The notes below the pieces were generated by a model that worked only from the letters and a program-made list of their open reading frames with translations, had not been told where the DNA came from and did not search any database. A stretch of 64,000 bases of DNA, taken from assembly GCA_965655095.1 (NCBI GenBank), contig OZ296655.1, forward strand, positions 67,022,001 to 67,086,000, given 5' to 3'. The stretch is from Haplodiscus bocki. Lineage: Eukaryota. Both the position numbers and the translations under genes were made by a program. Each line of letters opens with the position of its first letter. The stretch's first letter is position 1. Of the stretch, positions 1-21,652 are shown piece after piece.

Positions 1-60
1 GAAATCAGTTTTAATCCGTCAAAAATCAGCGCTGACTGTCTGTGAGATGTGAACTTCCAT
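1..60. repeat. End of a CAGCGCTG-rich dispersed repeat (MITE-like family)
   Basis: The reverse complement (GGAAGTTCACATCTCACAGACAGTCAGCGCTGAT) resembles the start of the copy at 6427 (CCGGGTTGAGGTCTTAGAGACACCAAGCGCTGAT). The same motif clusters at 2455-2520. Confidence 0.5.
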
Positions 61-497
61 CACAAGTATAAAGTTTTAGAAAAAAATCACATTTGGTTCA
101 AAAATCAGAAGACAGCGCGGATATTGGTAAACTAATTTGACGCCAACTGTTTCTTTTAATTATTTTTGTCCACAAATTATGGCAAATTTTGGCTCGTGAT
201 TAACTTTCGTATTGAAGCAAAAGGAGAAATACCAAAAACATATGTTTTCTGCGCCCAAATGGTCACGAGAACAATTAATCACATGGCACAAATGAGCATT
301 ACATTACAAATCATTTGGACGCCAGTTGCAGCAAGAGGATCTTTGGTATCAAGTTCTGACTTATGTCAATTAATTAAATGACGTTACCATACTGAACCAG
401 ATGACCAAAGTTTTTTGAGATTTTAGTTATTTAGTTTTCAATTTTTTTCATACAACCGTTCTGAAACAGTTGGCCACAAACAACAATATTTGAAGAA

Positions 498-540
498 ATG
501 AAATCTTTTTTCGTCATCTTGGGACTTTTTGTAGCTCTTG
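498..540 (+). CDS. Putative exon 1 (signal peptide) of a small secreted repeat peptide gene
   Basis: ATG at 498 reads MKSFFVILGLFVAL-G (Lys then a hydrophobic core) and is followed directly by a consensus donor G|GTAAG at 541; phase-1 intron. Confidence 0.6.
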
Positions 541-2536
541 GTAAGATTTTCTGATATTGTTTGTTCTTTCAATTTAACTTTGAAAAACTCATTTTTTGCA
601 TTCAGTTCTACCAAACTTTTTTTTCACTCGGTCAATATTTTTTCTAAGTTATCATAAAATTCATATAGGGTTGTTGTTGCTTGGTGACATTTTTCAATTT
701 TTTCCTGAACTTCAAACCTTTTGGTTCATTTGATAGATTTCTTCGGTTATTATTGACAAGCAAAGAATTCTTAGAAACTTAGAAACCCCCCATCAAAAAT
801 AAGCTAACGATGTGTTGCCGTGCTCGGTCAATCATGCAATCATTCGGGCCCTTTTATTTTCATCGCAATAGAAACTACTCGGGTTGCGAAACATTGCCGT
901 CACGTCGTGCGCTGTCCATGATCGTACCATCATCATGGCGAAACCTATTTTTTTGTGGTTTGCTCTCCGTGATTCCCCACAATTCATAACATATTGGTCT
1001 GCATAACTTTAATATGATCTTGGTGTGGTTTCCATGATTTTGCCATAATCATGTTATGGCCATAAAGAATTTTCTCGATCTATCGGACCACAAACTTGTT
1101 CACCAAAACCAGCTTTACACATCTTCAAATTGAAATTCATATGCTGTATTTTTAAGAAGGCATTTTCTTTATTAGACGTTGTTTCCAGAGGCTGTCATTA
1201 TTTTGATTGATTGATATTTCGATATCGAATTATTTTTTTTCATTTCGTTCCCAAAAAATCTAATGAGTTAATTTTAAGATTTCTTTCTGGAAAAAAATCC
1301 CAGATATTTTTAAAAAGTTATTGCAAATAACGTTCATTAGCACCTTTGCCGAACTTTCGTCCAAAATTTTTCTACAATAAAGGCTAATCGACCCGGTAAC
1401 TCATAGCAAAATAGCAATGGATACCGACATTTCGTGGAAAATTAGCGGAGGTTACCGGACTTTCGCAGCAAAATTCCGCCAGCAGCAGACGTTTTTATAT
1501 TGTTTTTCGTTCATAAAGTGTTTCCATGATATGTATATCTTTTCGGGGGCGAACCCAACAACTATACTTGTTTCCAGAGATAGAAACAAAAGAAGTTGCC
1601 TCTAGAAAAATTCCGAGACTCAATATTCTCTAAAAAACTTCTGTTCAGTTCACAAAATCATGGCATATACACAAGATAAAGATCCCTGTTTTCTAAGCAA
1701 AAATTGCTTTTTGCTCGTTTCGAGAAAAAAAATCATTCAAAAAATTGTGGTATCAGTTTTTTGAAAGTACATCAAGTCAAATGGTGTTTGATCCCAAGAA
1801 CTCGAGGATATCGGGGTTCCTCCGAGAAATTATCTTCAAAATTGACATTCGGACTATTATATCATAATTTAGTGCCGTTCTCTTTCTAAGATACAGTCGA
1901 CATTACGGGCACTTCTTGGCAAAAAACCGCCGATCTTCAACTTTCTCCAAAAATGTGCGACGATAAAAACGCATCGGCGAATCTTAAAATGATAGCAACG
2001 GAATGAGCAAAACTATGGGCGATCGTGGAAAAATAGCGGCGCTTCACGGAAAAAAATTCATAGACGTCGTTTATTCTTCAGCTGCATGCGAGAAGTGAAT
2101 TATTCTTATTTTTTTTAAAACGTTCAAAATAAATAATTTGAATTTATGCTTCAGAATTATTTTGAAATAAATTACCTTTTGATGAAATCTGGTTGCGTCA
2201 CTCATCACTATCACGTTTTCGACTGCACTGTGGCTTATTTGATTCATTGATCAAAACTTTTTTGCTAAATGTCACAACATTTTTGTAGCAATTGTTTAAA
2301 GCAAAACGCGCAACTTAGTTATCCTGTAATTGGTTAAATTTCAGTAGGGTGTGAATTTTCAACGTCCCCAGTTTGAAGCTTTCAGTTTTACATTAGATAA
2401 ACTCAGAGACGTGAATTACTTTAAAAAGTGCGAGCACCACCGTATTTATCCCACTGTTTAGCGCTGAAAAACGGAAGCAGTAATACAAATCAGCGCTGAA
2501 CAGCGCTGTTTTAGCTCTTAAACCAGAATTTTACTC

Positions 2537-2768
2537 GGATCTCGGATCTTTTCTGTTAACACCCCCCCCCCCTCACACACACCCACAATCACCGTGATGC
2601 GTGATGGATATGCGAAATAATAGGCAGCGTAATGTTTTAACTCACGCGCCAGCGAATTTTAGCCAACCAGAGACGAGTTCGCTTTTGCGTGGGGAGGGGG
2701 GAGGTGAGGGTAAAATTCCCGCTACTACTGGTGGGGGGGGGGCAGTGATTAAAGAAGATCCCGGATCT
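2537..2768. mobile_element. Small MITE-like element with imperfect terminal inverted repeats and poly-C/poly-G arms
   Basis: Left end GGATCTCGGATCTTTTCTGTTAACACCCCCCCC versus reverse complement of the right end AGATCCGGGATCTTCTTTAATCACTGCCCCCCCC. Confidence 0.55.
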
Positions 2769-3175
2769 CTATTACTGGGTGCTTCATATGGCTGTTTGTT
2801 CAAGCATGGACTTTTTGAATGGTGTAATATTTCTCGATGTTATAAGAATTGGTGTTTTTTGGGCAAAAAGAATTGCCATCGAAATGAATACTCAAATTAA
2901 TATGGATCGCAATTTCCAGCTTCGGTATTAATAGTTTCGTTATACTTGTTTAAACATATATATTTCAATTTCCAATTGACATATTGAGAAACAGGTTTTC
3001 CGATTCTGTTAACATATAAACATACATTTTTTTTTCATTACGTATAAATCTGGGGCGTGCCCTAAATGAAAAAAAAAGATTTATTGCAAGATTCATACAG
3101 AATCATGTAAATTTGTTGGAAAATGTGGCAAGTAAATGCGTTTTTCTTGATACATCTTGGAAGATCTAGCAAGAA

Positions 3176-4541
3176 GATGCGAGACAAAATCGCCGATTTT
3201 TGAGTGAGACAAAACAGCCGATTTTGAAAACGGGACAAAGTCGCCAATTTTGATAATGAGACGAAACCTCCGATTTGAAAGTGGGACAAAACCACCGATT
3301 TGTTATAATACAGATCGCTAATCTTTGCAAAGATAAAAGTTGTTCAAGATAAAAGCGTCTTGGCCTAAATACGGATAATTAGCAATTAAGTTACGGATGC
3401 GAGACAAAACCGCCGATTTTATTTTGAAAATGGGACAAAATCGCCGATTTTGATAATGAGACAAAACCGCCGATTTCGAAGTGGGACAAAACCGCCGATT
3501 TGTTATAATACAGATCGCTAGTCTTTGCAAAGATAAAAGTTGTTCAAGATAAAAGCGTCTTGGCCTAATTACGGATAATCGACAATTAAATTACCAATAT
3601 ACTAATGAAATGGTTTTAACTATCAAACACAAAATAACCAAGCCCAAAATACCCAAAGTTGAAAAAATTTTGACCAAAATTTGAATTTTTGTAAGAAGTG
3701 AATGTTAAAAATCTGGACGGCCAGGAACAGAAAATTATGAAAATTGATAATCCTAATATCTGTAAATTAAATTTTCTGTCACCTAAGGGGTTCCACCCCA
3801 AAATACCCAAGCCAAAAATACCCAAAGTCCCAAAATACCCAAGGCCAAAATACTCAAGGCCAAAATACCCAAGATTGAAACAACGATACCAATTAAATAA
3901 TTAAAAGCGTCTTAACGTCAAAAGTACCCAAAATACTTCATTGTTTGGGTATTTTGGGACTTTGAGTATTTTGGCCTCGGGTATTTTGGGTTCGGGTATT
4001 TTGGGCTTGGGTATTTTAGGCTTGGGTATTTTGAGTTTGGGTATTTTGTCCTGCCACCCACCTAAGGAAATGCCAATGAAACTGAAAAACTAGTACAAAA
4101 ACAACCAATTTTAATTTTTGCGTTATATAATTTTCTAATTTTTTTTGATACTCAATTGCATGAACCGAAAATATTCGTAAAGACCGTTTCTGAGTTTTTA
4201 GGGAATGACGTTTTTATTAGCCGCAAAAATTAGGAAATGGCATTTAGTTAGTAGTATCTCAGTTTCTAATAGTAATTGGTAATATAATTGCTAATTATCG
4301 ATAATTAGGCCAAGAGGCTTTTATCAGAGAAACAACTTTGATGGCAAATTGTTCTCTTCTACAAAATCGGCCGTCTTGTCCCACTTTAAAATCGGCTGTT
4401 TTGTCCCACTTTAAAATCGGCGATTTTGTCTCATTTTTGAAATCGGCGGTTTTGTCTCATTTTCGAAAACGGCGGTTTTGTCTCATTTTCGAAAACGGCG
4501 GTTTTGTCTCATTTGAAATCGGCTGTTTTGTCCTACCCCCT
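3176..4541. mobile_element. Foldback-type non-autonomous DNA element with long inverted arms built of ~24-bp subrepeats
   Basis: Left arm repeats GAGACAAAACCGCCGATTTT (3176-3500) and the right arm has the reverse complement AAAATCGGCGGTTTTGTCTC (4363-4535). The segment AAAAGCGTCTTGGCCTAATTACGGATAAT (~3552-3580) is inverted at ~4295-4322. Confidence 0.75.
3789..4058. mobile_element. Nested MITE with AAAATACCCAAG inverted subrepeats and a 9-bp direct-repeat flank
   Basis: CACCTAAGG at 3780-3788 and 4059-4067 flanks an element whose left half is (AAAATACCCAAG)n and right half (TTGGGTATTTT)n. The same arrangement recurs at 4735-4743 and 5029-5037. Confidence 0.7.
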
Positions 4542-4545
4542 TAAG

Positions 4546-5432
4546 TTACCATTATACTAATGAAATGGTTTCAACTATCAAACCCAAAATAACCAAGCCT
4601 AAAATACCCAAAATTGAAAAAATTTTGACCAAAATTTGAATTTTTGTAAGAAGCGAACGTTAGAAATCTGGACGGCCAGGAACAGAAAATTATGAATATT
4701 GATAATCCTAACATCTTTAAAATAAATTTTTTGTCACCTAAGGGGTTCCCACCCCAAAATAGCCAAACCTAAAATATCCAAGCCCGAAATACCCAAGCCC
4801 AAAATACCCAAAGTCCCAAAATGCCAAAGGCCAAAATACTCAAGGCCAAAATACCCAAGATTGAAACAACGATACCAATTAAATAATTAAAAGCGTCTGA
4901 ACATCAAAAGTACTCAAAATACTTCAATGCTTGGGTATTTTAGGACTTTGAGTATTTTAGCTTTGGGTATTTTGGTTTGGGTATTTTGGGCTCGGGTATT
5001 TTAAGTTTGAGTATTTTGTCCTGCCACCCACCTAAGGAAATGCCAATGTAACTGACAAACACTACAACAGCAACCAATTTTAATTTTTGCGTCATATAAT
5101 TTTCTGATTTTTCTTGATACTCAATTGCATGAACCGAAAATATCCGATAAGACCATTTTTGAATTTTTTGGGAAAGGCGTTTTTATTAGCCGCAAAAATT
5201 GGGAAATTGCATTTAGCTAGTGGTATCTCAGTTTCTAATGGTAATGGGTAAGATATTTGCTAATTATCGATAATTAGGCCAAGACGCTTTTATCAGAGAA
5301 ACAATTTTGATGGCAATTTGTTCTCTTTTACAAAATCGGCTGTCTTGCCCTACTTTAAAATCGGCGGTTTTGTCTCATTTTCGAAATCGGCGGTTTTGTC
5401 TCATTTAAAATCGGCTGTTTTGTCCTGCCCCC
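4546..5432. repeat. Diverged tandem duplicate of 3591-4541 (core plus right arm of the foldback element)
   Basis: Both copies start TTACCA(A/T)TATACTAATGAAATGG and end GGCTGTTTTGTCCT(A/G)CCCCCT; collinear throughout with scattered substitutions. Confidence 0.9.
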
Positions 5433-5683
5433 TAGCAAGAACCTTGCAAAAAAACGCAATCGTTAAAATTCTGCCTAATAAAAAATCTTGCAAGGGGGAA
5501 AATTTTGTAATAAATCAATTGCCTCTAAGGACCCTGTGGGAAAAGTAATGAACAGAAAACGGATTGCATCAAAATGCAAGACTTTTGCAAGAAATTTATT
5601 TTTGGACGGATCTTGTAAGATATGAATTTTTTGTTCAGTTTTCGTGGCTACTAAAACAAAATAACCATGAAAACTGTTTGCAG

Positions 5684-5964
5684 CGAGCTTGGTCAATTGT
5701 AGTGGCAACATCAAGTGGTACACGTCAGACTGGGGGTCCACTATGGACTGGGAGACATTCCTCAGCATCGACTGGTCCACGTCAGACTGGTGGTCCGCTA
5801 TGGACTGGGAGACATTCCTCAGCATCGACTGGTCCACGTCAGACTGGGGGTCCACTGTGGACTGGGAGACATTCCTCAGCATCGACTGGTCCACGTCAGA
5901 CTGGTGGTCCGCTATGGACTGGACATTTCTCAGCATCAACTGGTCCACTATGGAATGGTATTAG
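5684..5964 (+). CDS. Putative exon 2 encoding Trp/Asp/Ser-rich 19-aa repeats
   Basis: Acceptor TGTTTGCAG| ends at 5683. A phase-1 join with exon 1 gives ...VAL-A-SLVNC-SGNIKWYTSDW..., completing a signal peptide, in frame with the ORF-track ORF 5689..5964. TAG at 5962-5964. Confidence 0.55.
5716..5940. repeat. 57-bp tandem repeat, 4 copies, alternating A/B (114-bp higher-order period)
   Basis: Units start at 5716, 5773, 5830 and 5887 (the last is 54 bp). Copies 1 and 3 carry GGGGGTCCAC, copies 2 and 4 carry GGTGGTCCGC. Confidence 0.95.
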
Positions 5965-6320
5965 CCCACTATGGAATGGGATGAGTTTGCATTGTAATTC
6001 ATCTACGGAGCTTATCAATTTCACCACTTCAGCGGAAATGAAGAAACTGAAACTGGAAATGGCAAACGGGAGGAAATCAGAAATCGACTTCGTTTGTCAT
6101 CTACAAAAGGACTATGTTGACAGGTGGCAGGGTTAAGATATGAATGTAGCAACTGGTCTGTGAAAATATGCAAATGGAAGGGAAGCTCTATCGGCTATTT
6201 TTTTCATATTTAGAAAAGGTTCGACGAGAGGAAACATTTCAGTATGCACTTAGTCCATTTGGCCGAATGAAGTACTGCTACATGGTTGTAACACAGTATT
6301 GTAACGTGTTTGGTCAAAAT
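5965..6320 (+). pseudogene. Decayed C-type-lectin-like coding remnant
   Basis: With one frameshift and stops it reads MEWDEF..CNSSTELINFTTSAEM...RWQG*DMNVATGL*KYANG...C..W...GCN, resembling the CTLD pattern W..a...C....L..i.s.eE / WiG / g.W.W.nG / C..W...C. Motif resemblance only. Confidence 0.3.
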
Positions 6321-6426
6321 AGTCAGAGCGCAAAGGGGGTCTAGATAGGAACCTATTAGAGTTCAGCTGAACATTTTTAAATTCCAATCAGAATTGGAAA
6401 TCCTGAAAGGAATTTATTACCACCTT

Positions 6427-7250
6427 CCGGGTTGAGGTCTTAGAGACACCAAGCGCTGATCAGCTCTGAGTCGGAAGTTATCAGCGCTATTTCAGTACTA
6501 ATTTCAGTACATTACTTGAAAATCTGTGAACAGCGCTATAAGCACAAAGTTTCTGAGCCAAAAATCAGCGCTGAACACTGCTTGTTCTCTCTGATACAGC
6601 GCTGACTTTTCTTCAATTCAAAATGTAATTTTTTTTGCTGAATTTTCATTTTCTTTTCACGAAATTTTTCGAAGTTTTTTCAAGGCAAAGGTGCCGATTC
6701 TGATTTTGCTTCCATATGAGTGAAAAAATCGAACAATAGAACTTTTAGTTGTTCAACCTTCCTGCGAGCCAAAGTATAATAAACACCTAGAGTTTCCATA
6801 TGTCAATGATATCGAAGTAACATAGCTATTAATGCAACAAAGATGTTTGGCTTTCATTAGCTCAATTGGATGAACAAATTATTAGGATTTTCCCGTTTTT
6901 GAAGTTATTTTTTGAAAAAGTGGAAACATTTCGGATTTTGGATAATGAGATACAAATTTCCTTACCAGATTATGTGACTTCAACCTTGTTTGATTGTGTT
7001 TTCATTTTCTGATGATGTGATTTAACTGCGGAACAAGCAGAGTTGTCTCGGGTAGAATCAACGTTGAATCAGACCAACTAACCAATTTTCAAAGATAGGG
7101 AAAATAGCGCTGAAAAGTTCAGTCTTTAACAGCGTTGATTCAGAGAAATTCAGTGCTGATCACCTTTGAAACCACGATCATCTGCTGTTGTATTTTCCAT
7201 CTACTCTAAAACGGTGCCGATCAGTTCTGGTTTTGCTCTGATCGGGGCTT
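6427..7250. repeat. CAGCGCTG-rich dispersed repeat (MITE-like), decayed
   Basis: Clusters of (A)TCAGCGCTGA-like motifs at both ends (6450-6605 and 7105-7240) around an AT-rich middle. Confidence 0.5.
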
Positions 7251-7875: not shown

Positions 7876-8045
7876 AAAGCGGTAGTGCTAGTATTGCTCA
7901 ACTGCTCTTCCTTCTATTTCATTCAAATCAACTGCTCATATTGTCAAATTTGCGATTGACAAAGCGGTAGTGCTAGTATTGCTCAACTGCTCTTCCTTCT
8001 ATTTCATTCAAATCAACTGCTCATATTGTCAAATTTGCGATTGAC
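7876..8045. repeat. Exact 85-bp tandem duplication
   Basis: AAAGCGGTAGTGCTAG...TTGCGATTGAC at 7876-7960 and 7961-8045, no mismatch seen. Confidence 0.95.
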
Positions 8046-8949
8046 AGAATCCACATTTGATCTTGTCGTTACAGTCTTTTCAATATTTTCTTCGGTTTTT
8101 TAATTCTATTTCTCGCTTCCTCTTTATTTGACTGTAAACTCTGATCTAGGGTACTGCAAACTTTCCTTTTTTCCGCAATGACTTAGAAGACTAGATATAA
8201 AGCGAGAAATTCTGAAACCCGAGAAGTCGTTGAGAGGGATATTGAAGAAGATTCAGTAGGAACAGGAGAATAGATCAATAAAAATCAAAAAAGTGAATTT
8301 GTGAATAGTAGAGTTGGATCAATTACCATTAGTGCTGGCGCTTTTGTCCTAAACGAGCCTAATCAAACAGAGAAGGATTTTCAAGTGTTTTCACAATGGA
8401 ATGATGACGCTATTGAGAGTGGACTCAAGAGGACCTTAAGTGCTCTTGTTGATAAGCTAGTTAACGCAATATATGGGAATAAGAACTCAATTAGCGAAGC
8501 GGTGGTGTAGAGCCTGAGATCAGAAAATACAGGTAAAAAACTTGCTGGGTCTCGAACCAATGACTACATTGAGGATGCATATAACATGATGAGGAGCAAT
8601 CCAAGTCTTAATGATTTTGCAATCCTCTCACGGAAGGTTTTTTGAAACTCCCAGCCCCGAGAGAACTGAAGTGGAAAATCATCACACATAGGAAACGAGA
8701 ACTGCCATTCTTCATAAAAAAACAAATACGGCGAATTAGATGGTTTTGCACGAGAATTATTTTTTGTTTCCCTGGAAACCCATCATCGTCCGCTGATACT
8801 GTCGTGGACTCATTCAATTAGCTGAAGTTTTGAATTTTTCTACTTGATAAGGAATGCCTAAGAATGACTAATAAACCGAGTGAAAAAGTGTTGTCTTTGA
8901 AGTAAATAAACCTGAGCTTCTATTTAGCCTTGTTATAGAAAACTTCGGG

Positions 8950-20400: not shown

Positions 20401-21652
20401 GTCTAAACGGGAATTTTTTTATGTAGCTCCAACAACATCGTAGATGCGTTGACTGATGAAGTATTTCTTGTTCCCATGTCGTGATGTGGAGTTGCTTGAT
20501 ATCAACTAAACTTTAACTATTTTGGCTTAAAATGCGGTGGAAATCGAAAAATCTGATACATGCAAAACACGATCATTTGCATCATAGAACTTGGACATTT
20601 TTAATGACTTGTTGTCATTTAAACTTTACGTGTAACCCACAAAATCCCGCAAGGTTTCACAAAAATCACGGAAACAATTGTTGATTTTCAACGCAAGAGA
20701 CAAAATTTAGGCATCAAAGTTCTCAAATAAATCCCTGAAAATCATCCAAGAAACGTTAGGTAACCTAGAAAATTCAAATTTTAGGTAAAAACAAAGACTT
20801 CATGCAACTTTAAAAATAGTATTGCTAATTAGCGCATTAGTGGTTTTGATTTGATGGAAACAATTTGGTAGAAAAAAAGTGTACGAAGTCGTCAAAATTT
20901 AAATGTATCATGTTTTCATCAGAAAACCGAAAACTATCAGATAAGTTCAATAGGCCCCAACCAATAGGTTGAGTTGAACAAAATCAGAAGCTCACATTTT
21001 GTTAGCCTTGATCCCATTAGCTCGGTTGATCTACTTCTTAGGAGACAATTATACTTGCAAACAAAATACCGTGTTGAAAGCTTTAAAAAATTGAGACTCA
21101 TGCTTTTTGGCATTTCTGTTTTGCTTCAGCTCATGAACCTATCTCATAAATTTTGACCTTGTGCTGAACAGAAGATGCGTTCACTCTTATGTCCATACAA
21201 TCNNNNNNNNNNNNNNNNNNNNNNNNNNNNNNNNNNNNNNNNNNNNNNNNNNNNNNNNNNNNNNNNNNNNNNNNNNNNNNNNNNNNNNNNNNNNNNNNNN
21301 NNNNNNNNNNNNNNNNNNNNNNNNNNNNNNNNNNNNNNNNNNNNNNNNNNNNNNNNNNNNNNNNNNNNNNNNNNNNNNNNNNNNNNNNNNNNNNNNNNNN
21401 NNAGTTCAAATCCTGATTGAATAGTTTTAGATAGTGTCTCAAATTAAGTGGACTTTGGTCTATCGGTTTTTTGCTAAAACAAGTTGTACTAGAGATCAAA
21501 ACTTTCAAACGTCATTATCAGGAAATTGAAGTTTATATTCGTAAAATATGAATAGAAGCATCTTCCACAGCTTCGGGGTTAGTCACGTTTCCTTGCAGAT
21601 AATCCAAATGATATACTTGATAGACTACGAAGAATAATACAATAAAAAACAT
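17500..21652 (-). pseudogene. Decayed multi-CUB-domain-like coding sequence
   Basis: Minus-strand fragments: signal-like MFFIVLFFVVY..LQGNVTNP (ATG 21652), ISGTSGILTAHMY (~20090), LSYGDFASINF (~19330) and LIFLKYHSPASLPFGFLLQ (~18260) resemble CUB start (G.i.SpnyP) and end (v.F.sd....GF.l.y) motifs. Many stops; spans the N gap. Confidence 0.45.
21203..21402. other. Assembly gap (200 N)
   Basis: Run of exactly 200 N, typical of a fixed-size scaffolding gap. Confidence 0.99.

What the first reader, a model, noticed from the sequence alone, without database searches (positions are those of the whole stretch)
498..5964. Hidden two-exon gene for a secreted, Trp-rich tandem-repeat peptide
Seen: a signal-peptide micro-exon (498-540, GTAAG donor) splices in phase across a ~5.1 kb TE-filled intron onto TTGCAG|5684. 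The product is 107 aa: MKSFFVILGLFVALASLVNC-SGNIK, then four WSTSDW(G/W)S(T/A)(M/V)DWETFLSID-type units and WSTMEWY, with 16 Trp and almost no basic residues. The ORF track misses it. Inference: a lineage-specific secreted peptide (adhesive, structural, defensive or propeptide-like). I recognise no family for it.
Basis: partly seen in the sequence, partly recalled or inferred. Interest (0 to 1): 0.7.

Follow-up and report, generated by a model that had tools for sequence, protein, structure and literature searches.

The report
Candidate secreted Trp-rich repeat peptide gene
An acoel-worm locus can be read as a two-exon gene for a small secreted, tryptophan-rich repeat peptide with no known relatives, but no RNA evidence could be obtained and another reading frame or a non-coding minisatellite remains possible.

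Summary
These are an ATG micro-exon (498-540, MKSFFVILGLFVAL plus one base, GTAAG donor), a 5.1-kb TE-filled gap, a CAG acceptor before 5684, and a 92-codon frame over a 57-bp x4.3 tandem repeat ending at TAG 5962-5964.

The repeat is single-copy in the 1.5-Gb genome, so it is not a high-copy repeat. The genome carries the Symsagittifera roscoffensis spliced leader exactly. No protein relatives or families were found.

For the gene:
- Signal-peptide-like micro-exons of this quality are rare here (none other in about 315 kb; about 0.001 per kb in simulation).
- Exon 1 sets the only repeat frame that contains ATGs.
- All unit lengths are multiples of three.
- Exon 2 is a GC island (54% against 33-36%).

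Against the gene:
- The repeat is open in four of six frames.
- Four of six differences between units are synonymous in a different frame, which also stays open about 50 codons on each side of the repeat.
- A better-looking acceptor lies 45 nt upstream.
- An 80%-identical copy of the exon-1 region on another chromosome has ACG instead of ATG.
- The structure model has low confidence.

I put the proposed gene at about 0.4. This is a plausible orphan gene of modest interest.

The parts
265..679 (.). Segment around exon 1 that has one diverged copy on another chromosome (C11:73518365-73518779)
   Evidence: blastn gives 72% identity over 415 bp. Identity by bin is 0.80 (443-497), 0.86 (exon, 498-540) and 0.80 (541-620), falling to 0.62-0.71 further out. 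The C11 copy has ACG for ATG, a 2-bp insertion and TGTAAG.
468..469 (+). AG 28 nt upstream of the ATG, preceded by a T-run (441-449): a possible spliced-leader acceptor (inferred only)
   Evidence: Read. The genome holds the S. roscoffensis spliced leader, and 30% of that species' genes are trans-spliced (PMC9911081).
498..540 (+). Proposed exon 1: ATG, 14 codons (MKSFFVILGLFVAL) plus one base, then donor G|GTAAGA (phase 1)
   Evidence: It is the only such micro-exon of this quality in about 315 kb scanned.
541..5683 (+). Proposed intron, 5143 bp, mostly transposon-derived
   Evidence: Element copies at 3586-4560 and 4541-5424 plus partial copies from 3166. Old repeat at about 1350-2060.
5631..5638 (+). 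Rival acceptor TTGTTCAG (exon would start at 5639), with a longer T-tract
   Evidence: It resembles acceptors of this genome's HSP70 introns. Joined to exon 1 it meets TAA after eight codons, whereas in the other '+' frame it is phase 0 and open.
5648..5654 (+). TACTAAA, a branch-point-like motif 30 nt before AG 5682-5683, with no AG in between
   Evidence: Read; the role is inferred.
5684..5964 (+). Proposed exon 2 coding part: 2 bases completing Ala, 92 codons, TAG
   Evidence: GC is 54% against 33-36% in the flanks. Single copy in the genome at DNA and protein level.
5709..5948 (.). 57-bp tandem repeat, 4.3 copies, arranged (A-B)x2; unit 4 carries a 3-bp deletion
5941..6000 (.). Degenerate last unit, which holds the TAG (5962) and a TAA (5995) in the Trp frame
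5552..6136 (+). Rival open frame (Ser/Thr/Gly/Pro-rich, basic), 194 codons, open 52 codons before and 50 codons after the repeat; no ATG before 5978
   Evidence: No relatives; no paralogue of its tail.
5478..5960 (-). Rival open frame on the minus strand, 161 codons
   Evidence: Only weak sub-threshold Pfam hits.
6778..6783 (+). First AATAAA downstream of the stop, 814 nt away

Best explanation

Proposed mechanism:
1. Transcription starts shortly upstream of 498. The transcript may receive the spliced leader at AG 468-469.
2. The strong donor at 540|541 is spliced across a 5.1-kb intron, swollen by recent transposon insertions, to AG 5682-5683. A TACTAAA branch-like site lies 30 nt upstream of that AG.
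3. The product is a 107-aa preprotein. Exon 1 and the first residues of exon 2 form an n-h-c signal peptide (MK / SFFVILGLFV / ALA), with Ala-Leu-Ala built across the junction. Cleavage would follow that Ala, or the Cys five residues later.
4. The released peptide is about 87-92 aa, acidic (pI about 4), about 18% Trp, and made of four and a bit W-S-T-S-D-W-(G/W)-S-(T/A)-(M/V)-D-W-E-T-F-L-S-I-D units. It is probably largely disordered, with a short helix at each DWETFL.

Shown: all the sequence signals, the single-copy status, the lack of relatives, and the rarity of such micro-exons.

Inferred: transcription, the junction, secretion, and any function. My guess at function is an extracellular, aromatic-rich matrix, mucus or carbohydrate-contacting peptide.
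For: - Exon 1, donor, acceptor, frame and stop are as described.
- Micro-exons of this quality: one in the window's 128 kb, none in another 187 kb, and 0.001-0.002 per kb in a 2-Mb Markov simulation. The chance of one in the right strand and phase within 5.2 kb is therefore roughly 0.002-0.01.
- Exon 1's phase selects the Trp frame. That is the only '+' frame with ATG codons inside the repeat.
- Units of 57, 57, 57 and 54 bp are all multiples of three.
- Exon 2 is a GC island, and it is the only non-TE minisatellite with three or more copies at TRF score 150 or more in 64 kb.
- It is single-copy.
- The intron size and TE load are normal for this clade.
- Identity to the C11 copy peaks over exon 1.
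Against: - There are no RNA data.
- The repeat is open in four of six frames.
- Four of the six substitutions between units fall on codon position 1 of the Trp frame. They are replacements there but synonymous in the other '+' frame.
- That other frame is open about 50 codons on each side of the repeat, whereas the Trp frame closes inside the degenerate last unit.
- The 5684 acceptor has a short pyrimidine tract. The acceptor at 5639 matches local acceptors better.
- GC3 of the Trp frame is about 80%, against 44% in HSP70 genes.
- Codon usage gives no support.
- The nearest AATAAA is 814 nt after the stop.
- The C11 copy of the exon-1 region has no ATG, and its flanks are nearly as conserved as the exon.
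- AlphaFold2 mean pLDDT is 43.5.
- There are no relatives anywhere.
Confidence: 0.4

Rival explanations
1. A non-coding, single-locus GC-rich minisatellite lies between transposon fragments. The upstream signal-peptide-like ATG micro-exon is a chance product of T-rich DNA inside an old duplicated segment, and the two are never joined.
For: - The repeat is open in four of six frames, so an open frame proves little.
- The units are young, and their differences show no purifying selection in the Trp frame.
- The degenerate edge unit carries stops in that frame.
- There are no relatives, no family and no confident fold.
- The second copy of the exon-1 segment has ACG and a frameshift, with flanks about as conserved as the 'exon'.
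- The acceptor is weak and there is no nearby poly(A) signal.
Against: - It must treat several things as coincidence: the rare high-quality micro-exon in the right strand and phase, the unit lengths and deletion all being multiples of three, and the long open extension of the other '+' frame.
- The array is not part of any repeat family.
Confidence: 0.3
2. The repeat is coding, but in the other '+' frame (…STGPRQTGGPLWTGRHSSA…). It would be a basic, Ser/Thr/Gly/Pro-rich, mucin-like terminal exon running from acceptor 5639 or 5684 to TAA 6134-6136, and belonging to a gene whose 5' exon(s) I did not find.
For: - The frame is open for 194 codons (5552-6133), about 50 codons beyond the repeat on each side. 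The window's mean stop-to-stop length is 18 codons.
- Four of six substitutions between units are synonymous in this frame, and units 2 and 3 are identical as protein.
- GC3 is about 32%, closer to the genome's habit.
- The strong acceptor at 5638|5639 is phase 0 in this frame.
Against: - There is no ATG in this frame before 5978, and no convincing phase-0 start exon upstream. The only link to exon 1 would need the poor donor TTT|GTAGCT at 530.
- No relatives, no paralogue of the tail, no real Pfam match, and codon usage is neutral.
- The statistics are post hoc: p is about 0.1 for the substitution pattern and about 0.06 for the downstream extension.
Confidence: 0.18
3. An intronless gene on the minus strand (5960 down to 5478), encoding …SMLRNVSQSIADHQSDVDQ… repeats with a 78-aa unique tail.
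For: The frame is open for 161 codons, contains Met codons, and extends 77 codons beyond the repeat.
Against: - Differences between units fall on its second codon positions.
- The tail is Phe/Leu/Lys-rich, like translated AT-rich DNA.
- Only weak sub-threshold Pfam hits.
- Its synonymous-codon score is the worst of the six frames scored.
Confidence: 0.05

Closest known systems
Taxonomically restricted (orphan) secreted tandem-repeat peptides of invertebrates, built as a signal-peptide exon with a phase-1 intron followed by a repeat exon
   Same: A short first exon carries most of the signal peptide. A phase-1 intron sits inside or just after the signal peptide. The second exon is made of young tandem units. 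There are no homologues outside the lineage.
   Different: Membership is only by architecture. Expression, secretion and conservation in sister species are untested here. The extreme Trp content (16 of 107 residues) combined with acidity is unusual.
Trp-rich antimicrobial peptides (indolicidin or tritrpticin type; from my own knowledge)
   Same: Small secreted peptides with a very high Trp fraction.
   Different: Those are short and cationic (Arg/Lys-rich). This product is acidic (11 Asp, 4 Glu, 1 Lys in the mature part), about 90 aa and repetitive. No sequence similarity was found.
P0004, an unnamed 419-aa protein with (S/D/N)WGTSDYNSGL repeats, an N-terminal hydrophobic segment and a C-terminal membrane anchor
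   Same: A W-x-T-S-D-aromatic repeat core. It is the most similar motif among the five weak matches from 1.84 billion representatives (E 1.4e-4).
   Different: The match is driven by repeat composition. The unit length (11-12 aa) and architecture differ, it has no Pfam family, and its origin was not determined. I regard it as convergent, not homologous.
Neuropeptide or other multi-copy propeptide precursors
   Same: A signal peptide followed by tandem copies of a short unit.
   Different: There are no mono- or dibasic processing sites and no Gly amidation signals between units. This defining feature is not met.

Membership tests
Sec-type N-terminal signal peptide | Positively charged n-region followed by a hydrophobic h-region of about 8-15 residues | tested here: met
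   MK then SFFVILGLFVAL. The best 10-residue Kyte-Doolittle mean is 3.13.
Sec-type N-terminal signal peptide | c-region with small uncharged residues at -3 and -1 (AXA rule), as scored by a predictor on the whole precursor | tested here: inconclusive
By eye, Ala-Leu-Ala forms across the junction (G540 + CG = Ala) and is followed by SLVNC/SGNIK.
Expressed, spliced protein-coding gene | RNA reads spanning the 540^5684 junction | not testable with these tools
The protein collections hold no product of this locus. They hold only a 97%-identical HSC70 from a metatranscriptome for this lineage.
Expressed, spliced protein-coding gene | Purifying selection in the proposed frame | tested here: not met
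   Of six substitutions between units, one is synonymous in the Trp frame and four are synonymous in the other '+' frame. The numbers are small, and no orthologues are available.
   One locus only, by DNA and by six-frame protein search of the whole 1.5-Gb assembly. The flanking 476 bp are also unique.
Multi-copy neuropeptide or propeptide precursor | Basic cleavage sites flanking each unit | tested here: not met
   There is no Lys or Arg anywhere in the repeats.
Any curated protein family (Pfam-A) | A match above the gathering score | tested here: not met
   No families for the Trp frame. Only sub-threshold noise for the two rival frames.
C-mannosylated W-x-x-W or cytokine-receptor WSXWS motifs (from my own knowledge) | Trp spacing W-x-x-W, or W-S-x-W-S | tested here: not met
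   The spacings here are W-x4-W, W-W and W-x5-W.

The most novel reading that the evidence does not exclude
The locus is a de novo gene caught young. A non-coding T-rich segment, whose sister copy on chromosome C11 still reads ACG, gained an ATG and now serves as a signal-peptide exon. It is spliced to a recently expanded private minisatellite, giving this acoel a brand-new secreted, acidic peptide with about 18% Trp. Expansion and contraction of the repeat would tune the peptide.
Probability: 0.12. Interest if true: 0.6.

Novelty: new member of a known kind. Interest (0 to 1): 0.3.

Why it matters
If it is expressed, this would be an orphan secreted peptide of unusual composition in Symsagittifera, a model for photosymbiosis and early bilaterian biology. 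It would also be a clean example of how a signal-peptide micro-exon and a young minisatellite combine into a new secreted product.

If it is not expressed, it is a useful caution. Tandem repeats are open in most frames, so a gene stitched together across 5 kb needs RNA support. Either way the locus is of local interest only, and one look at existing RNA-seq data settles it.

Tried and rejected
- Each exon was searched by reference, and the signal-peptide cleavage site was judged by eye only.
- Relatives:
  - Pfam found nothing.
  - The word search found nothing for either '+' frame.
  - The full HMMER scan of 1.84 billion representatives gave only five matches driven by repeat composition.
  - ESM Atlas scored at most 0.84 with low recognition.
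  - A literature search for the motif found nothing.
- Control search: this lineage is represented in the collection only by metatranscriptome fragments (97% HSC70). The missing self-hit therefore says nothing about expression.
- Paralogues: none for exon 2, for its peptide, or for the tail of the rival frame.
- The C11 copy of the exon-1 segment has no repeat-like exon, GC island or comparable array within 11 kb downstream.
- Codon usage and synonymous-codon scores, trained on about 5000 HSP70-family codons from this genome, did not separate the frames.
- AlphaFold2 on the single sequence gave mean pLDDT 43.5, so no fold search was worthwhile.
- Rfam gave only a far sub-threshold hairpin hit inside the transposon.
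- Trans-splicing at 5639 or 5684 does not rescue a signal-peptide-less gene in a useful way. The first AUG after 5684 is in the Trp frame (5743), but it gives a product without a signal peptide.
Full report
**What is there**

- Window 498-539 translates to MKSFFVILGLFVAL. Base 540 is a G followed by GTAAGA.
- The ATG has A at -3, and an in-frame TGA lies at 462-464.
- At 5675-5683 the sequence CTGTTTGCAG ends in an acceptor AG. G540 plus CG 5684-5685 makes an Ala codon.
- Window 5686-5964 then reads SLVNCSGNIK, four units of the type WSTSDW(G/W)S(T/A)(M/V)DWETFLSID, then WSTMEWY and TAG.
- Tandem Repeats Finder reports a 57-bp unit, 4.3 copies, 91% matches, at 5709-5948, with a 114-bp (A-B)x2 higher order.
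- The units measure 57, 57, 57 and 54 bp.
- The exon-2 part has 16 Trp, 11 Asp, 4 Glu and a single Lys; pI is about 4.

There are two small corrections. The first unit is WYTSDW. The array continues into a degenerate fifth unit (5941-6000), which is where the TAG sits.

**Whose genome**

Earlier notes of this scan call the genome an acoel. I checked this. The spliced-leader sequence published for Symsagittifera roscoffensis (PMC9911081) occurs exactly in more than 100 listed places. It occurs 1641 times with up to three mismatches, against none for the reversed control. The window's GC content (about 36%) equals the published 36.7%. The genome is therefore S. roscoffensis or a very close relative.

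In that species introns average 2.5 kb, 61% of the genome is repeats, and 30% of genes are SL trans-spliced. A 5.1-kb repeat-laden intron is unremarkable there.

**The intron**
- Positions 3586-4560 and 4541-5424 are two tandem copies of a ~960-bp non-autonomous element. Further pieces start at 3166.
- That element has at least 3814 first-look candidates in the genome, with copies up to 97% identical.
- Positions about 1350-2060 belong to an older family with at least 3567 candidates.
- 'TE-filled' is therefore confirmed, and the intron was once much shorter.

The 57-bp unit is not part of a high-copy repeat. DNA and six-frame protein searches of the 1.5-Gb assembly find only this locus. The 476 bp after it are also unique. 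The exon-2 island (about 5434-6430) is single-copy DNA between transposon fragments.

**Is exon 1 more than chance?**

I scanned for ATG-started open segments of 10-30 codons with these properties: an early Lys or Arg, no early acidic residue, a 10-residue Kyte-Doolittle mean above a threshold, and a GTRAG donor.
- In the window's 128 kb (both strands) there are three at threshold 2.0. Only this one passes at 2.5; its score is 3.13.
- In a further 187 kb from other loci there are two at 2.0 and none at 2.5.
- A 2-Mb second-order Markov simulation gives 0.0065, 0.002 and 0.001 per kb at thresholds 2.0, 2.5 and 3.0.

A micro-exon this good, on the right strand, within 5.2 kb and in a phase that opens the repeat, is expected by chance roughly 0.002-0.01 times. 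The criteria were set after seeing the candidate, so the true figure is somewhat higher.

Read by eye across the junction, the c-region is Ala-Leu-Ala followed by SLVNC/SGNIK, which fits the -3/-1 rule. I did not build or submit the joined product, and no signal-peptide predictor was run.

**Other points for a gene**
- All unit lengths and the one deletion are multiples of three.
- Exon 2 is a sharp GC island: 54% against 33-36% around it.
- It is the only non-transposon array with three or more copies in the window at TRF score 150 or more.
- A TACTAAA lies 30 nt before the acceptor AG, with no AG in between.
- The Trp frame is the only '+' frame with ATG codons inside the repeat.
- AG 468-469, preceded by a T-run, could take the spliced leader 28 nt before the ATG. 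This is inference only.

**Points against**
- The repeat is open in four of six frames.
- The other open '+' frame (…STGPRQTGGPLWTGRHSSA…) runs for 194 codons (5552-6133). That is about 50 codons past the repeat on each side, where the mean stop-to-stop length is 18 codons. The Trp frame extends only 15 codons upstream and closes inside the degenerate last unit.
- Of the six substitutions that distinguish the units, four hit codon position 1 of the Trp frame (G/W, T/A, M/V, D/N). Those four are synonymous in the other frame, and only one of the six is synonymous in the Trp frame. With six events this is weak (p about 0.1), but it points the wrong way.
- Introns of this genome's HSP70-family genes end in T-rich tracts such as TTATTTTAG, TTTTTTGTTAAG and TTTGCGATTTCAG. 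The acceptor TTTTTTGTTCAG at 5638|5639 fits these better than CTGTTTGCAG at 5683|5684. Joined to exon 1, it would terminate after eight codons.
- GC3 of the Trp frame is about 80%, against 44% in the HSP70 set. Codon-usage scores do not favour any frame.
- The first AATAAA is 814 nt past the stop.

**The exon-1 paralogue**

Window 265-679 has one diverged copy at C11:73518365-73518779 (72% overall).
- In that copy the ATG is ACG, two extra T's shift the frame, and the base before GTAAG is T.
- Identity is 0.86 over the exon and 0.80 on both immediate flanks, falling to 0.62-0.71 further out. It peaks at the exon, but not significantly.
- Nothing like exon 2, no GC island and no comparable array lies within 11 kb downstream of the C11 copy.
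- This fits either a decayed duplicate of a gene's 5' end or a non-coding duplicated segment in which one copy happens to carry an ATG. Without an outgroup the direction cannot be told.

**Relatives and structure**
- Pfam: nothing.
- Word-indexed search of 5.8 billion proteins: nothing for the Trp frame or the other '+' frame.
- Full HMMER scan of 1.84 billion representatives: five hits, all repeat-composition matches. They comprise translated satellites, a TPR-like protein and one WGTSDYNSGL-repeat protein of unknown origin.
- A control search with this genome's HSC70 found a 97%-identical protein from a JGI metatranscriptome but no 100% hit. The collection therefore lacks this genome's own gene set, and the missing self-hit says nothing about expression.
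- ESM Atlas: best score 0.84, low recognition.
- AlphaFold2 on the single sequence: mean pLDDT 43.5, with only short helices at the DWETFL segments.
- The motif does not occur in the searched literature.

**Weighing**

The non-coding reading must treat three things as coincidences: the rare in-phase signal-peptide exon, the triplet-preserving unit lengths, and the long open second frame. The Trp-frame gene must explain away the second frame's openness, the substitution pattern and a weak acceptor. The second-frame gene has no start codon or credible 5' exon; the only link to exon 1 needs the poor donor TTT|GTAGCT at 530.

| Reading | Probability |
|---|---|
| Non-coding minisatellite | about 0.3 |
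| Coding in the other '+' frame | about 0.18 |
| Minus-strand ORF | about 0.05 |

The remainder is left unassigned.

The function of the Trp-frame product is unknown. The propeptide idea fails for lack of basic sites. An extracellular, aromatic-rich, acidic and largely disordered peptide is the most that the sequence supports.

**What could not be done**

The decisive test is simple: existing RNA-seq, SL-read and 3'-end data for this species should be laid on C8:67022001-67029000.

Noticed in passing
window 3166-5433: Two tandem copies plus fragments of a ~960-bp non-autonomous element. It has subterminal 25-26-bp repeats (AAATCGGCGGTTTTGTCTCATTTTG) in inverted orientation and internal inverted arrays of a 15-bp unit (CCCAAAATACCCAAG). 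There are at least 3814 first-look candidates genome-wide, with copies up to 97% identical, so it was active recently. Its hairpin gives a far sub-threshold Rfam hit to the plant family MIR6224 (47 bits against a gathering score of 171).
   Followed up: partly
whole genome; L031, L032: The 32-nt spliced leader published for S. roscoffensis occurs 1641 times (up to three mismatches, both strands; reversed control 0), scattered over all large scaffolds rather than in one tandem cluster. This identifies the genome. It also suggests dispersed or retroposed SL RNA gene copies.
   Followed up: partly
window 7876-8046: A perfect 85-bp x2 tandem duplication (100% identity), evidently very recent.
   Followed up: no
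window 1-60, 2440-2530, 6430-6600; L006 9840-9940: Short dispersed fragments sharing an AAATCAGCGCTGAAC-type motif bracket the single-copy islands of exon 1 and exon 2. They are probably remains of another small transposon family.
   Followed up: no
G000:C3:13742869-13745057 (L015, L029): An HSP70-family copy with two in-frame TAG stops and a TGA in its first exon, probably a pseudogene. At least eight intact HSP70-family genes were also seen.
   Followed up: no
window 5667-5702: A short ATG-started ORF (MKTVCSELGQL, then a stop) straddles the proposed acceptor. It would act as an upstream ORF in any transcript that used the 5639 acceptor.
   Followed up: no
window ~21200-21400: A run of 200 N (assembly gap or masked).
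   Followed up: no
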